Assembly (NCBI GenBank): GCA_023334545.1
Contig: JAADVB010000091.1
Location: 641-64,640 of the forward strand
DNA length: 64,000 nt
Source: Salisapilia sapeloensis CBS 127946
Lineage: Eukaryota > Protista > Oomycota
Direction: 5' to 3'
Positions within the stretch are counted from its first letter, which is position 1, and every line of letters begins with the position of its first letter. The notes under the pieces are model-generated. The model did not search any database. It was not told the DNA's origin and saw nothing but the letters and a program-made list of their open reading frames with translations. This document shows positions 43,859 to 58,485 of this stretch, in pieces. The position numbers and the translations under genes were made by a program.

Positions 43859-45237
43859 GCTATTTAGCAGCGATGTCAATTTGATTGTCAAGCACCAGGC
43901 ATTAAAATAAAGTATGCTTCGGCTACTATCAACAATGGCCTTTTCGTGCCAATTTAGTACGTTTCTGGCCAAAGTGAATGTCGGTGCGGAAAGGAATGAT
44001 TGCTGTTGAGGTGGTTGAATGACCGAGAAACGGAAACTTGGGCTGGACTGCGTTGTACGAACAATCAGCAAGCAAAGGCATTGAGCTTATATACATGATA
44101 ATTGACAATGCACCATTAAAGTTGGCGAAGACTAGTTAATATAGGAAAGATACAGGATACAGTACAGAGAGGTGAACTAAGTGGAGGATAAGTTGAATCT
44201 GATCTCGCCGGACGATATTCTAGGTATGGCCATGAATCAATAATGGAAAAGGCCACGATCCTTTTCGCAGCGGCAGGTTTGTTTCGCAACGGACGATCCT
44301 CACAATGTGCCAGATACCGGCCAATTCGTAGAGCTACCGTCTATAGCTGGCGATCATACGCTGCCTATAGTCATTTGCACGGTATCAAGCCATCGATTCT
44401 TATATTTCGCTAATCATTGCTATATCTCAAATATCTATAAACGCGATCATGATACTTGTCACAAGCCTTATAGCATTTGAAACGTCCGAGTGTCTTTTTA
44501 CTGGAACTTCTTACGGATCATACATCCCATCGCTGCCAATATCTATGTTCACAATCAAGTATGTGTATTTGAATCTGCTTGATTTGCTGTGATAATCCAA
44601 TCGTCCCGCTAAGAGAACACTACTGTTGTGAGTCAGTCCAATTACAAGCTATGGATAGATGCATCCACATTTCCAGAAGGGTACAAGCATAGGAAATGAG
44701 TACTGCAAAGGTAAATTTAAAACGTCAGTAGTCTGTGCTGCATTTGATTCCATCTCTAGTCACTACTAAACTATATTTATTTTCGGATTGCCCAATAGAG
44801 ACCACTGTATTCACACTGCTAAACTACATGATGAAGATTATCTCGGCTGGTATGCTTGAGACAGCTACGTAAACTAAACCATCCGCAGTCTTAAATGAAC
44901 TGCTAGCTGCAGCGGGCAATTGCTTGTGATTCGAACCGCAAGAGCAGATTCGATCGTGATACTTTTCCCAGCAGAGATCCCGAAGTTACCTTTGGACCGA
45001 CAGCAATCTCGTGGCAACATATCACAAGAATTAAGCGGTTTGGTCGCTTCATTCCATAAACTATCCCATCAAAAGGATACTACCAAGAAACAACGATGAA
45101 GTGAGCTATCACAAGCAAGCTGTCTTCGCTCTTTGTTTGACTCGCACCCGATGGCATGTACAGAGACCAGGTTCTCTTATACGAGGGTGGGTATCACAAC
45201 GTCACCAACGAATCGCCACGAAATACTTCAGCAAGGG

Positions 45238-46924
45238 ATGAAGGCCTTTCGTTCGGTGGCCCAGCGAGTTGGCATGCATAAATGTAGTTTCATTAAGCCC
45301 CACGCTGCTGCATGTGGTCATGCAATATCAGGTAAAATGATGGACCATGGAAAGCGCATGTTTGGGTCGGATGGCATGGACGCCTTCCTCGAATTTGAGC
45401 GTGAGATGGCATTAAAACGCAAGAAAAAGGTATGTTGCCGTCTGTATATAATTGTCTACTATATCTAACGGTGTGCCGAAGTAGGAAGGGTATACACCGA
45501 GTGGTCCAGTCCAAAAGCCTGAGAAGCCAAAGGACGAAGAATGCTGTGGCATGGACTGCCCCAACTGCGTGCTCCTAATCTATCAGGAAAAACTGTTGGA
45601 GTACGAGCTTAGTCAGATGGAAGGAGGTGGAGATGAGTCCGAGCAGGTGACATTACCTCCTCCAAAGTACAACGTCTCGCTCCTAGAACCGGATGAGTCG
45701 TTAACGAGAGAAGACCAAGTACAGATGCGTCTAAATGACCAAAGCTGCTTTGACGTCGTCGAGAACAAAGTCCTGAGCCGGGAACATGCAACTCGAACAG
45801 GCGAGGCAAGGTCAGTGCATCATCTAGAGCTAGCAATACGACCGGACCAGCAGGAATTTGTGACAGAAGACGCTGCCAACGCTGCTGTGTACGTGCCAAA
45901 CGAGAAAGATCTCGTGGATCGAGTGCTCTCTCGTCTTCAAGTCGACGGTAGCAGGTACTACAAAGCGTCTGTGATGGAGCATGAAGATGATCCTGTACGT
46001 AAAAGCAAGCAATGCGCCCCGACGCACCCATTTCTCGAAATAGGAAGCGTGCGAGACGCGCTTACATGGACGTTTGATTTATTCTCGACACCTCGATCGA
46101 GTTTCTTACGCCACTTGTCAGCGTACGCTACAGATCGTGATGAAGAGGCTGCGTTGAAACAACCTCAAGCGAGTGAACGACTGCTGGAGGACATCGGACA
46201 AGAGTTCATGACCGTGGCGGATGTGTTCGACCAGTTCCCTTCCATCCACATAGACTTTCGCTCGTTCTTTCAATTGGCGCCATTGAACCCACCGAGGTAC
46301 TACACTGTGTCTTCGTCTCGAAGGTTCAACCGAGATAGCGTCGCCATCACGTTCGGTCTACGAGACGTTTTGCCAGTGCCGCGATGCTCCCACTACATGT
46401 CTAAGATGACACCTGGCGCCAGCAGTTTACGCGCGCAATTGTGCGAATCATCGTTTGTCTTTCCACGACAGGATCATCGGCCATTGATGATGGTCAGTGC
46501 TGGTACTGGCATTGCCCCCTTTCGTGCGTTTGTCCAAGACCTTCGATTTGAAGAATCAAGTCGCAAAGCTTACCTGTTTTATGGGTGCCGCGATCCGTCC
46601 GTAGATTTTCTGTACAGACGTGAGATGGAGCAAGCACGAGCGGACGGGATCCTCGACCGCCTGCAAGTAGAGTTTTCGGCCAATAGCCAGCGATACGTCC
46701 AGCACGGACTCGCAGAGAATTTGGCATTGGTCGCTAGACACATCCTAGAAGAGGAAGGCTATGTGTATGTATGCGGGAGTCGGGTAATGGGGAAAGCGGT
46801 TAAGGACACGCTAGCCGATGCACTGCAAACGCAGTACCCATCTCGCTTTCCAACGCGGTCGACGGCCGATGCGACGCTCTCTGAACGTATCGCCAGCCAC
46901 CAAATAGTCACAGAATTATGGTAA
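45238..46924 (+). CDS. Oxidored-like (Cys4) domain fused to a CPR-type FAD/NADPH-binding reductase module, lacking an FMN domain; probable mitochondrial presequence; 2 exons (45238-45429, 45485-46924)
   Basis: KPEKPKDEECCGMDCPNCVLLIY, followed by RSVHHLEL, PRYYTVSSS, MVSAGTGIAPFRAF, LFYGCR, YVQH, YVYVCG and a terminal W. There is no flavodoxin YGS(Q/E)TG loop. Confidence 0.82.
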
Positions 46925-47109
46925 TAAAAGCACAACTTTCCGACGTATTTTATGCGTCTCGTCCCAGAAAACGTAAACCTAACCCATCCGGAAGGCACCC
47001 CGACTCAGGGATGCCAGTTCGTACCGTCTCATACGTCCGCCTCATACTTGCCTTGACTATGCTACCACGTTACAGACCGGCAGTCGACGTCATTTGCTTA
47101 TTCGCGCTC

Positions 47110-47781
47110 ATGAGCACAATCCAGCGCCACAGCAGCTCCTTCGGGCAAAATGGAGGATGCGAAAGTAGTATCTCTTCCAAATGTTCCTCCCCGCTCGCAA
47201 CCACCTACCCGACGCAGCCCACGTACCGCCGGACGTTCCGACCCTTGAAGAAGGGCGTGACGTACGACCGCCATGGAGACGTCCTGAATTGTCGCTTCTG
47301 CGCCATCCTAAGCGCCCGCGCAGAAGACTTTTTATACGAAGACAAGGAAATCGCAGTCTTCCGACCACTCGCACCCGTCGCACCGTCTCATATCCTCGTC
47401 GTGCCCCGCTGTCACGTCCGGAACGTCAATCACTTGCAGCGAACGGACTTGGCACTCTTGTATCGCATGAAGACCGTCGCAGAGCGTGTGCTTGGCGAAC
47501 AATTCGCTTCCTTAACGACATTAGAAGCATCCTCTTCCAGCACAGGTCCAGACACGACCGCCGCGACATGCAAATTCGCTTTCCACACACCTCCATTCAA
47601 CAGCATCGATCACGTCCACATGCATGCTTTTCGAGTCGACGAGCAACCGTCAGTCGGGACAATCGGAGCCATCAAGTTCCGAACGGCAACATGGTGGTGT
47701 CGGTCCTATGAAGAGATATTGCGTCGACTACAAGGCATGCATGACGCGACGACGCCGCACTCGGACGATTCGAACCTCTAG
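47110..47781 (+). CDS. HIT-family nucleotide hydrolase (HINT3-like)
   Basis: CRFC, LYEDKEIAVFRPLAPVAPSHILVVPRCH and FHTPPFNSIDHVHMH (HxHxH). The start is uncertain (47059 or 47110). Confidence 0.88.
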   Translation: MSTIQRHSSSFGQNGGCESSISSKCSSPLATTYPTQPTYRRTFRPLKKGVTYDRHGDVLNCRFCAILSARAEDFLYEDKEIAVFRPLAPVAPSHILVVPRCHVRNVNHLQRTDLALLYRMKTVAERVLGEQFASLTTLEASSSSTGPDTTAATCKFAFHTPPFNSIDHVHMHAFRVDEQPSVGTIGAIKFRTATWWCRSYEEILRRLQGMHDATTPHSDDSNL

Positions 47782-56608: not shown

Positions 56609-58485
56609 TTACGCACCAAGCAACGTGTTACTCTCCTGTACAGGTTGATCGTTACCGTTGTAGTTGCGGCGATAGAAATGGACAGCAGCAAAGGCACAAA
56701 CAGCAATGACAGCAGTCACAGCGGCAGCAGATACATACTGCATCGTAGACTGCATTCCCTTGTCGTCATTCGACTTTGTACCGGCAGACTCTTGTGGAGG
56801 AACGGGCGACGCGCATTCTTCATCCGTACGAGGCTTCTTGGCAAAGTCGAAAGCTCGTAGGAACGTATCCAATTCACAAAGCGCTGTCAAGAGCAAGAGT
56901 CGTCAGACACACAAAGATGAAGAGTACTTAGGACGAAACATACTGTCTTGGCATTCCGGAACGAGTAGTGGCTTCCCCAAGAAGATCATTCGGGCAGCGT
57001 GCTTGCCATTCATGAGCTTGTACAGCTCAATGTTGAGCACACCAGCGTACGGCGTCCACTTTCGATCCCAATGATGGCGGAGACTGGCCGCCAAGAACGG
57101 CATGATAGTCGAGTCATGGCCTATATACACTTGTTAATCGTACATTCGCTGCGTACTCTAGAGCTCATCAAGTACCCATGGTAATGGCCAACTTGGGAGC
57201 AGCCTCGCCGTTGGCCATGGCCTCCATCCGTCCTCGGATCTCATTCGCTAGTGGCTGCATGCCGATATTGGAGAACCACGAGTCGTTATAAAGTAGCTGC
57301 ATGCTCTCCCTCCACTCCGCTTCTTCGATGAGCGACTGGAAGAGAGAGTCATCGACTTGTCCAGGCAGCGGCAGACCATTGCAACGCGAGACACTAAGGC
57401 ATTCGAGCATAGTGCCCCACTCAAAGTTCCCAGCACCCTTTTCAAACTTATTCTGCATGTCAAGCACTTCTTTCGAGTGAATATGGGCTTGGAAGTCATC
57501 GGAGCTTTTCGCTACGCCACCAATGTATGGAAGGATGGGGCAGATATTTCCATTGGCATTGATATGGTCCGTCGCGTAGTCGGCAACATGCCAAGTGAGT
57601 TTGTCGTCGAGACTTCGAGAGAGACTGGAGCCATCGGGAGGAAAGAAGCCGTCCATGAGCGCATGGCCGGAGCCGACAGTACGCTCCTCGTCATCGCTAC
57701 AAGCAGACATTGTCAGTGTATGCAGGAGGAACAAGAGACTGAAGAAAGGTACCTGCGCAAGTAGATGCTGTCGACAGGAGGCTACGAACAATGAACAGTA
57801 AGTGCATGCAGCCTACCAGATACGCTAGAGAAGCTACCGATTCATCGGAGAAGAGCTTGAGAGGTCCTTCGCCGATGTACGCCTTCCTCAGGTGTCTAGT
57901 ACCAACATTAGCGAAACGGAAGAGACTCGTATCTCTAGAAGAGCGTACTCTCCATTTCGAAGATGCTGTTGTCGGCCGATGTCGAGTAGTCCACCGACGA
58001 TACAATCACCGTTCAAGATGTTCTCTCCATCCAGATACGACTTCTTGTACAGCCTTCCAAATCCTTTCTCCGAGGTATTCCCGATATCTTGAGACTAGAC
58101 GAACCCACTTTGTTACTCTACGCATCTTTTCATACTATATCGAGACCTACCGAGACGGAGCTTGTACTACAGTTCCACGTTGCCAGCATCGGATTCGTAT
58201 TCGAGTCCCAGCAACGTAGCTTTGTAAACGGAGCTCGAGCCCCGTGCCTAGCAATCAGCTACGAAAGTATCGACTTAAGGTATGTACGTATCGACTTCTA
58301 TCATATCGTCGAACCTGCACTTGCTCGAGGCTCTCGACCCTTTGCTCCTGATCCGGTGTCAACGGGGTAATCGCTTTATCCGCGATGCCTTCCAAATCAT
58401 TACAGTAGGCATGCGGCTGCCATCCGTCGTACCTCGAGGCCGTCGCCGTGGCTATGAAGACAGTCGAAAGCGCCCAGACTCGCAT
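56609..58485 (-). CDS. Histidine acid phosphatase (lysosomal-type, signal peptide + C-terminal TM), multi-exon
   Basis: IARHGARAP (RHGxRxP) and YIGHDST (HD), with a signal peptide, TM YVSAAAVTAVIAVCAFAAVHF and a tail ExxxLL motif. Confidence 0.9.

What the first reader, a model, noticed from the sequence alone, without database searches (positions are those of the whole stretch)
45238..46924. Flavodoxin-less 'CPR' with a Cys4 Oxidored-like module in place of FMN: candidate new mitochondrial electron-transfer enzyme
Seen: exon 1 encodes a basic, acid-free presequence-like N-terminus ending KRMF|GS, then MDAFLEFERE. After a phase-0 intron comes KPEKPKDEECCGMDCPNC (CC-x3-C-x2-C, nt ~45515-45568), directly followed by a complete cytochrome-P450-reductase-type connecting/FAD/NADPH module (RYY.VSSS, GTGIAPFR, FYGCR, YVQ, YVCG, terminal flavin-shielding Trp). 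No flavodoxin/FMN loop is present. Established: CPR, NDOR1, MTRR and NOS reductases pass electrons NADPH->FAD->FMN. The PxxP..CC.xxC.xC pattern is the Oxidored-like domain (PF09791), which I recall from small mitochondrial OXLD1/UPF0651 proteins and from fusions to cytochrome-b5-reductase-like (not CPR-like) enzymes. Inference: the Cys4 site may bind a metal or Fe-S centre and replace FMN as the one-electron output, giving a self-contained mitochondrial NADPH-dependent reductase with an unknown partner.
Basis: partly seen in the sequence, partly recalled or inferred. Interest (0 to 1): 0.75.

Follow-up and report, generated by a model that had tools for sequence, protein, structure and literature searches.

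The report
Flavodoxin-less oomycete reductase with Cys4 module
This is a real, expressed two-exon gene for a probably mitochondrial enzyme, found only in oomycetes (water moulds), that keeps the FAD/NAD(P)H half of cytochrome P450 reductase but carries a tiny four-cysteine "Oxidored-like" module where the FMN domain should be; nobody knows what that module does.

Summary
The gene is exon 1 45238-45429, a 55-nt GT..AG intron, and exon 2 45485-46924. Spliced transcript contigs confirm this model. Pfam finds Oxidored-like PF09791 (26.9 bits, cut-off 24), FAD_binding_1 and NAD_binding_1. No flavodoxin domain is present in the protein, the transcript or the 64-kb window.

The same architecture, with an invariant CC-x3-C-x2-C motif, occurs in Phytophthora, Peronospora, Pythium, Globisporangium, Saprolegnia, Achlya and Aphanomyces. 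In a search of 1.84 billion representatives, no hit outside oomycetes covered the module. The clade is monophyletic and nests among protist P450 reductases. Oomycetes also keep a normal P450 reductase.

Two corrections apply. The presequence is not strictly acid-free. The Arg that binds the NADPH 2'-phosphate in P450 reductase is Ala here, so NADPH specificity is not assured.

The interpretation that the Cys4 centre replaces FMN as electron relay remains untested. Two AlphaFold models disagree on where the module sits. The only solved PF09791 protein is a subunit of Chaetomium complex I (7zm7 chain o), for which no extra metal is reported. This suggests a rival reading: the module is a docking element.

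No paper describes this family. I rate it a new variant of a known kind, of moderate to high interest.

The parts
45159..45237 (+). 5' untranslated part of the mRNA (the longest transcript contig starts at 45159)
   Evidence: X1 contig 3 begins at 45159 and X4 contig 19 at 45217. An in-frame stop lies just before 45133.
45238..45363 (+). Presequence-like N-terminus, aa 1-42, ending KRMF|GS (R at -3, F at -1)
   Evidence: 8 K+R and 2 D+E. Orthologues have extensions of 19-49 aa with 4-9 K+R and 0-2 D+E. All end R-x-F/Y-S just before the conserved MDAFMEFERE.
45364..45429 (+). End of exon 1: conserved segment GSDGMDAFLEFEREMALKRKKK, predicted helical in the orthologue model
   Evidence: A52, F53, E55, E57, R58, E59 and K63 invariant in A4. 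(helix 48-67 of P0008, pLDDT about 52-54).
45430..45484 (+). Intron 1, 55 nt, GT..AG, phase 0
   Evidence: the joint 45427->45483 (cut +2) is seen in transcript contigs of runs X1 and X4. Fragmentary gene calls in other oomycetes read through at the same place.
45485..46924 (+). Exon 2 (479 codons plus stop)
45512..45613 (+). Oxidored-like module (PF09791), aa 10-43 of exon 2: Pro-rich lead, Cys4 motif, amphipathic helix
   Evidence: 26.9 bits, cut-off 24. (16 invariant columns, mean column identity 67%, against 41% for the whole-protein alignment A1, which also includes canonical reductases).
45542..45568 (+). Cys4 motif CCGMDCPNC (CC-x3-C-x2-C)
   Evidence: The motif is present in 24 of the 25 gene models checked; the one model lacking it is an aberrant N-terminal Aphanomyces astaci call, and another model of that species has the motif.
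45761..46354 (+). FAD_binding_1 (connecting domain plus FAD barrel), including RYYTVSSS at 46295-46318
   Evidence: 86.6 bits. (Z about 35 to plant and rat P450 reductase and the BM3 FAD domain)..
46490..46804 (+). NAD_binding_1: GTGIAPF at 46502-46522, FSANSQRYVQ at 46673-46702 (Ser-Ala where P450 reductase has Ser596-Arg597), YVCG at 46766-46777
   Evidence: 57.4 bits..
46910..46921 (+). C-terminal TELW: flavin-stacking Trp as the last residue, with Glu where P450 reductase has Asp675
   Evidence: The same (Q/T/A)E(L/V)W ending occurs in the nearest protist P450 reductases.

Best explanation
The gene is nuclear, has two exons and is expressed. It encodes a flavoprotein that is probably imported into the mitochondrial matrix. 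The CPR-type module binds FAD and takes a hydride from NAD(P)H; the coenzyme is not settled. The FMN/flavodoxin domain is gone. In its place in the chain, about 14 residues before the connecting domain, sits a PF09791 module whose four invariant cysteines most likely hold a metal. My committed reading is that this Cys4 metal site is the enzyme's one-electron output, passing electrons from FAD to an unknown matrix acceptor as FMN does in P450 reductase. Shown here: the gene model, transcription, the domain content, loss of the flavodoxin domain, conservation across oomycetes, and intact FAD and nicotinamide residues. Inferred: matrix location, metal binding, electron relay, and the acceptor.
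For: Architecture and expression. Cofactor residues: the FAD and nicotinamide residues are conserved (R-Y-Y-T, GTGxAP, catalytic Cys, terminal Trp). Fold: Z is about 35 to P450 reductase and BM3 FAD domains. Conservation: the module is among the most conserved parts of the protein (16 invariant columns; mean identity 67% in A2, against 41% for the whole-protein alignment A1, which also includes canonical reductases), and the Cys4 motif is present in all correctly modelled orthologues from Saprolegniales to Peronosporales. Retained connecting domain: this is the part that positions the FMN domain in P450 reductase, which suggests something still docks in that cleft. Established knowledge: FNR-family flavins hand single electrons to a carrier docked at the dimethylbenzene edge, and isolated P450 reductase FAD domains reduce protein acceptors poorly. 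Motif spacing: it includes C-x3-C-x2-C, the spacing that ligates [4Fe-4S] in radical-SAM enzymes (my knowledge; only an analogy). Model: one AlphaFold model puts about 40 N-terminal residues in the space of the FMN domain of closed rat P450 reductase (426-434 aligned residues against about 391 for FAD-only structures). Location: presequence features occur in all orthologues, and OXLD1 import into mitochondria has been shown (PMC8664129).
Against: No metal binding is shown for any PF09791 protein. The module's placement is not reproducible: in the model of the Pythium orthologue, alignments to P450 reductase start only at the connecting domain. The pLDDT of the Cys loop is below 50 in the window model. 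The only solved PF09791 protein (7zm7 chain o) is in a 2.4-A complex I map for which only the canonical 8 Fe-S clusters and 1 Zn are listed; I could not check whether its Cys motif is modelled. A nine-residue Cys4 motif with adjacent cysteines has no precedent as a redox centre that I can cite.
Confidence: 0.3

Rival explanations
1. Docking reading. The PF09791 module is an anchoring peptide, possibly stiffened by Zn, that clamps the FAD/NAD(P)H reductase onto a partner. By the only structural precedent, that partner is the tip of the peripheral arm of respiratory complex I (the NDUFV3 site on NDUFV1/NDUFV2). Electrons, if any pass, go from FAD directly to a centre in the partner; otherwise the enzyme is a recruited accessory subunit.
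For: A profile of the oomycete module hits one solved chain, 7zm7_o 'Oxidoreductase-like domain-containing protein', residues 231-260, with the CC-x3-C-x2-C motif aligned (E 0.0025). 7zm7 is Chaetomium thermophilum complex I. Its paper says the one non-conserved subunit binds at the NDUFV3 site and was identified from density (PMC9699679). A cell study reports that OXLD1 levels change complex I and V activities (PMC12413873). Low pLDDT and irreproducible placement of the module fit a peptide that orders only on a partner. Enzymes recruited as complex I accessory subunits are well known (NDUFA9, acyl carrier protein, carbonic anhydrases; my knowledge).
Against: That chain o is the NDUFV3-site subunit is my inference by elimination; the supplement was not available. 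Mammalian NDUFV3 chains in the PDB are not hit by the profile at E<=10. Yeasts without complex I keep PF09791/UPF0651 proteins (from memory, not checked). Human OXLD1 has not been reported in complex I structures. Docking alone does not explain four invariant cysteines.
Confidence: 0.2
2. Structural zinc reading. The Cys4 motif is a redox-inert zinc knuckle used for folding, oligomerisation or membrane association. The enzyme reduces a diffusible or separate acceptor (a quinone, ferric chelate, cytochrome or ferredoxin-like protein) directly from FAD, as bacterial flavodoxin-less sulfite-reductase-flavoprotein-like proteins presumably do.
For: Flavodoxin-less PF00667+PF00175 proteins are common in bacteria (for example P0049, P0053 and P0056, about 380-390 aa). 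Short Cys4 motifs in matrix proteins are most often Zn sites (general knowledge). No extra Fe-S cluster is reported in 7zm7.
Against: This does not explain why the module is among the most conserved parts of the protein. It also does not explain why Pfam defines the domain by its position at the N-terminus of oxidoreductase-like proteins (description).
Confidence: 0.25
3. Dithiol reading. The CPNC pair at the start of the helix is a redox-active dithiol/disulfide that the flavin reduces, making the enzyme a disulfide reductase.
For: A CxxC at a helix N-terminus is the classic thioredoxin-fold redox motif. The motif is invariant and the helix starts right after it.
Against: No FNR/CPR-family enzyme is known to reduce a disulfide directly, and the flavin faces are occupied by Trp/NADPH and by the protein (established knowledge). 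In the Chaetomium protein the pair is CVNC and the general family has no Pro. Four cysteines are invariant, not two.
Confidence: 0.05
4. Artefact reading. The architecture is a gene-model artefact or a decaying gene: two genes fused, or a P450 reductase whose flavodoxin exon was missed.
For: Several public models of orthologues are wrong. Some are fused to a histidine phosphatase (P0025, P0028, P0030). Some lack exon 1. Some are split at introns.
Against: One spliced transcript contig spans both exons in two runs. Orthologue alignments are collinear over 13 species. There is no flavodoxin-like sequence in 64 kb. The reading frame is intact and the catalytic residues are conserved.
Confidence: 0.02

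Closest known systems
NADPH-cytochrome P450 reductase (for example rat CYPOR 1AMO/5URD, plant ATR2 5GXU) and the P450 BM3 FAD domain (4DQK)
   Same: It has the same connecting, FAD and NAD(P)H fold (Z about 35; phmmer E 2e-32 to 4dqk). It shares R-Y-Y-(S/T), GTGxAP, the catalytic Cys and a C-terminal stacking Trp. The nearest non-oomycete relatives are true protist P450 reductases.
   Different: There is no FMN/flavodoxin domain and no membrane anchor. A mitochondrial-type presequence and a PF09791 module sit in their place. Arg597 is Ala, Asp675 is Glu, and Trp is the last residue.
OXLD1 / UPF0651 small mitochondrial proteins (PF09791)
   Same: It shares the Pro-rich lead, the CC-x3-C-x2-C motif and the following helix. 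A presequence-dependent mitochondrial location is shown for human OXLD1 (PMC8664129).
   Different: Those proteins are small and have no catalytic domain. Here the module is fused to a 420-aa reductase and preceded by an oomycete-specific conserved helix (MDAFMEFEREMA). The biochemical function of OXLD1 is itself unknown.
Chaetomium thermophilum complex I subunit, PDB 7zm7 chain o ('Oxidoreductase-like domain-containing protein'; probably the paper's Ct-NDUFV3)
   Same: It shares the PF09791 core; PP.P.EPDNCCMSGCVNCVWDAYREE aligns with the oomycete module.
   Different: It is a 380-aa protein with the module at residues 231-260 and no reductase domain. It is a structural subunit of complex I. 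Nothing shows that the oomycete protein binds complex I.
FNR-family reductases fused to an iron-sulfur domain (phthalate dioxygenase reductase type; from established knowledge, not tested here)
   Same: They are a precedent for the logic NAD(P)H -> flavin -> fused Cys4 Fe-S centre -> partner.
   Different: Those enzymes use a full plant-type [2Fe-2S] ferredoxin domain of about 90 aa and a two-domain FNR module without a connecting domain. Here the Cys4 motif spans nine residues and no cluster is shown.
Bacterial flavodoxin-less sulfite-reductase-flavoprotein-like proteins (PF00667+PF00175 only)
   Same: They have the same loss of the FMN domain with the connecting domain retained (for example P0049, P0053, P0056).
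   Different: They have no PF09791 module and no presequence. They are a different, distant branch (25-31% identity).

Membership tests
Diflavin reductase (P450 reductase / NDOR1 / MTRR / NOS reductase / CysJ) | FAD_binding_1 (connecting domain plus FAD barrel) with the R-x-Y-(S/T) motif | tested here: met
   PF00667 scores 86.6 bits. RYYTVSSS aligns with P450 reductase RYYSIASS. Z is about 35.
Diflavin reductase (P450 reductase / NDOR1 / MTRR / NOS reductase / CysJ) | NAD(P)H domain with GTGxAP, the catalytic Cys and a C-terminal aromatic residue stacked on FAD | tested here: met
   PF00175 scores 57.4 bits. GTGIAPF, YVCG and the terminal W are present.
Diflavin reductase (P450 reductase / NDOR1 / MTRR / NOS reductase / CysJ) | FMN-binding flavodoxin domain (the second flavin) | tested here: not met
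   There is no PF00258 hit and no tblastn match in the window. The transcript has no further exon. The domain is absent in all orthologues.
Diflavin reductase (P450 reductase / NDOR1 / MTRR / NOS reductase / CysJ) | 2'-phosphate-binding Ser596-Arg597-Lys602 (NADPH specificity) | tested here: not met
   The window has Ser-Ala and Gln-Arg. Peronosporales and Pythiales have D, G, E or S at the Arg position. Only the two Saprolegnia sequences keep Arg.
Oxidored-like / OXLD1 family (PF09791) | Match to the family profile above its curated cut-off | tested here: met
   The score is 26.9 bits against a cut-off of 24, over profile positions 9-40 of 46. Aphanomyces scores 28.9 bits and Achlya 23.1 bits.
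Oxidored-like / OXLD1 family (PF09791) | Pro-rich lead plus CC-x3-C-x2-C followed by a helix | tested here: met
   The helix follows the motif in both models.
Oxidored-like / OXLD1 family (PF09791) | Mitochondrial location | not testable with these tools
   Only presequence-like features could be assessed. No targeting predictor or experiment is available.
Iron-sulfur or other metal redox protein | Bound redox-active metal centre | not testable with these tools
   Only the Cys pattern is known. No cofactor is reported for the solved PF09791 chain.
Complex I accessory subunit at the NDUFV3 site | Physical association with NDUFV1/NDUFV2 | not testable with these tools
   Module homology to 7zm7_o is the only link (E 0.0025).

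The most novel reading that the evidence does not exclude
The PF09791 module docks this FAD/NAD(P)H dehydrogenase at the NDUFV3 site on the tip of oomycete complex I. It would form an extra, lineage-specific nucleotide-oxidising or regulatory head on the respiratory chain. This would also assign a general role, as a complex I N-module adaptor, to the uncharacterised OXLD1 family.
Probability: 0.12. Interest if true: 0.85.

Novelty: new variant of a known kind. Interest (0 to 1): 0.58.

Why it matters
If the Cys4 module carries electrons, it would be a new minimal redox module replacing FMN in a P450-reductase scaffold. It would also give the first biochemical handle on PF09791/OXLD1, a conserved eukaryotic mitochondrial domain of unknown function. 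If the module is a docking element, it points to a reductase tethered to a respiratory complex. Either way, the enzyme appeared only in oomycetes in a search of 1.84 billion representative proteins. Oomycetes include major crop and fish pathogens. The enzyme is therefore a candidate lineage-specific mitochondrial function that deserves localisation and knock-out studies.

Tried and rejected
1. A search of the 5.8-billion protein set restricted to residues 1-60 found only 3 candidates and no hit, although orthologues share long words there. It was uninformative.

2. ESM Atlas searches, run on the whole protein, on the N-terminal part, and with the P450 reductase families skipped, gave only generic FAD/NAD-binding clusters or nothing.

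3. I searched with a profile of the presequence plus module for stand-alone small paralogues. All 14 hits are fragments of the same gene, read through at introns. No stand-alone oomycete OXLD1-like protein was found this way.

4. The Cys4-to-flavin distance could not be measured because model coordinates are not exposed. As a proxy I compared aligned ranges against closed P450 reductase. The two models disagree, so I do not use the placement as evidence.

5. Rfam and Pfam searches of the transcribed island upstream (44741-45177) found nothing.

6. A single-sequence phmmer search of the Phytophthora module against the PDB found only a chance hit. The 7zm7_o hit needs the profile.

7. Both are left as unverified.

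8. The supplement of PMC9699679 is not held, so the identity of chain o with 'Ct-NDUFV3' is an inference.

Full report
**Observation.** The stretch 45238-46924 (+) holds a two-exon gene. Exon 1 (45238-45429, 64 codons) and exon 2 (45485-46924) are separated by a 55-nt GT..AG intron in phase 0, and the spliced product is 543 aa. The CC-x3-C-x2-C motif itself is at 45542-45568. Pfam finds Oxidored-like PF09791 (26.9 bits, cut-off 24; aa 10-43 of exon 2), FAD_binding_1 PF00667 (86.6 bits) and NAD_binding_1 PF00175 (57.4 bits), with no flavodoxin domain.

**No hidden flavodoxin exon.** A tblastn search of the whole 64-kb window with flavodoxin-bearing P450 reductases matches only the FAD/NAD(P)H part at 45638-46921. 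Public runs of one study hold transcript-like contigs. Those of X1 (1718 nt) and X4 (1661 nt) run from 45159/45217 to 46931 with exactly the 55-nt intron removed and no further exon. The runs are labelled only 'RNA?', but a contig lacking a GT..AG intron is cDNA-like.

**Relatives.** The 5.8-billion protein search returns the same architecture (PF09791+PF00667+PF00175, about 440-560 aa) in Phytophthora, Peronospora, Pythium oligandrum, Globisporangium and Saprolegnia, at 44-51% and 30-32% identity.
- The exhaustive search of 1.84 billion representatives adds Aphanomyces and Achlya.
- Among its 150 best hits, every protein that covers the N-terminal module is an oomycete protein. The next hits are ordinary flavodoxin-bearing reductases.
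- The best of these, P0125 from Lapot gusevi, matches rat and human P450 reductase at E 1e-131 to 1e-133.
- In a quick maximum-likelihood tree of the FAD/NAD(P)H part, the nine module-bearing sequences form one clade (SH-aLRT 99) nested among protist P450 reductases.
- The window sequence is sister to the Phytophthora/Peronospora/Pythium/Globisporangium group, and Saprolegniales lie outside that.
- A normal oomycete P450 reductase (P0212, Peronosclerospora, 707 aa) falls elsewhere in the tree, with a diatom P450 reductase. The family is thus an extra paralogue, not the oomycete P450 reductase itself.
- The window protein is not in the protein collection, and its best identity is about 50%. The source is therefore a divergent oomycete-like organism.

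**Anatomy.**
- *N-terminal extension.* All full-length orthologues start with a poorly conserved extension of 19-49 aa that is rich in Arg/Lys (4-9) and nearly free of acidic residues (0-2). It ends R-x-F/Y-S directly before the invariant MDAFMEFERE. This is the classical look of a matrix presequence with an R-3 cleavage motif; no predictor was available. The window's extension has one Asp (D36), so 'acid-free' is slightly overstated.
- *Module.* Next come a conserved helix (MDAFLEFEREMALKRKKK), a Pro-rich loop, the Cys4 motif and a second helix (VLLIYQEKLLEYELS). This module is among the best conserved parts of the protein. It has 16 invariant columns and 67% mean column identity in A2, against 41% for the whole-protein alignment A1, which also includes canonical reductases. 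CC.[LM].CPNC is present in 24 of the 25 gene models checked; the one exception is an aberrant N-terminal model.
- *Catalytic part.* It keeps R-Y-Y-T-x-S-S-S, GTGIAPF, the catalytic Cys (YVCG) and a terminal E-L-W. It folds like P450 reductase (mean pLDDT 88.5; Foldseek E 1e-30; VIA Z about 35).
- *Coenzyme site.* The Ser596-Arg597...Lys602 site that binds the 2'-phosphate in P450 reductase reads Ser-Ala...Gln-Arg in the window, and Ser-(D/G/E/S) in Peronosporales and Pythiales. Arg survives only in the two Saprolegnia sequences. Use of NADH, or of both coenzymes, is therefore possible.

**What the module does.**
- *Literature.* I found nothing on its biochemistry in the literature. OXLD1 is a processed protein imported into human mitochondria in a membrane-potential-dependent way (PMC8664129). 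One cell study reports effects on complex I and V activities (PMC12413873). No paper describes the oomycete fusion.
- *Structural lead.* A profile of the oomycete module hits exactly one solved chain, 7zm7_o (also 7zmb, 7zmg). Its name is 'Oxidoreductase-like domain-containing protein', and residues 231-260 align with the Cys4 motif (E 0.0025). No other PDB chain is hit even at E<=10.
- *Identity of that chain.* 7zm7 is complex I of Chaetomium thermophilum. [quoted passage not shown] By elimination, chain o is that subunit. This is my inference, because the supplement is not held.
- *Cofactors in that map.* The paper lists only the eight canonical Fe-S clusters and one Zn. If the Cys motif is modelled in the 2.4-A map, it carries no reported cofactor.

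**Structure models.** Model coordinates are not exposed, so the Cys-to-flavin distance could not be measured.
- In the window model, full-length closed rat P450 reductases align from model residue 9-13 (chain 134-169) with 426-434 residues. FAD-only structures align from residue 58-60 with about 391 residues. So about 40 N-terminal residues lie where the C-terminal part of the FMN domain and the hinge lie in P450 reductase.
- In the model of the full-length Pythium orthologue, alignments start only at the connecting domain (model residue 120-124, chain 239-246).
- With pLDDT of 50-72 in the module, the placement is not reliable, and I count it neither for nor against.

**Verdict on mechanism.**
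- *Firm.* This is an expressed, conserved gene, confined to oomycetes as far as the search shows. It encodes a flavodoxin-less P450-reductase paralogue with a PF09791 Cys4 module and a presequence.
- *Likely.* The protein is in the mitochondrial matrix, and hydride passes from NAD(P)H to FAD.
- *Open.* The role of the Cys4 module is unresolved.

**Novelty.** The architecture sits in public databases under automatic names ('hypothetical protein', 'NADPH--hemoprotein reductase') but is undescribed in the searched literature. It is a new variant of a known kind.

Noticed in passing
window 44741-45177 (+/-): All four runs hold a transcribed island of about 390-435 nt just upstream of the gene. In X1, X3 and X4 it is not joined to the reductase transcript, and a gap lies at 45133-45158. 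The X2 contig reaches 45177 and overlaps the start of the X1 gene contig by 19 nt. It has no ORF of 60 aa or more, no Pfam hit and no Rfam hit. It may be a long 5' leader or a separate non-coding RNA. Earlier notes of the scan suspected cryptic exons here.
   Followed up: partly
window 45592-45657: One 58-nt contig of run X2 skips 64 nt with CT..AC ends, which is GT..AG on the minus strand, inside exon 2. This could be a spliced antisense transcript or an assembly artefact. It would shift the frame if it lay on the sense strand. Support is weak (28 nt on the shorter side, one run).
   Followed up: no
window 46990-47781 (+): The downstream neighbour is a HIT/DcpS_C-type histidine-triad protein (PF11969 63.6 bits, PF01230 39.8 bits). 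Its transcript contigs begin only about 65-130 nt after the reductase stop codon, and its longest ORF overlaps that stop.
   Followed up: partly
window 56813-58446 (-): A histidine-phosphatase (PF00328-type) gene lies here. In Phytophthora and Pythium this gene sits next to the reductase orthologue, and several public models wrongly fuse the two (P0025, P0028, P0030, P0031). This indicates local synteny, with about 10 kb between the two genes in the window.
   Followed up: partly
orthologue gene models (P0002, P0010, P0014, P0015, P0020, P0022, P0023, P0136, P0304-P0316): Many public models of this family are truncated, lack exon 1 or the Cys4 module, or read through introns. The read-through points show that the intron after ...ALKRRK.. 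is conserved, and that some species have a second intron after ...VLLVYQ.
   Followed up: partly
window 46673-46702: The Arg that binds the NADPH 2'-phosphate in P450 reductase is lost in the window and in the Peronosporales/Pythiales orthologues, and is kept in the two Saprolegnia sequences. This suggests a lineage-specific change of coenzyme preference.
   Followed up: partly
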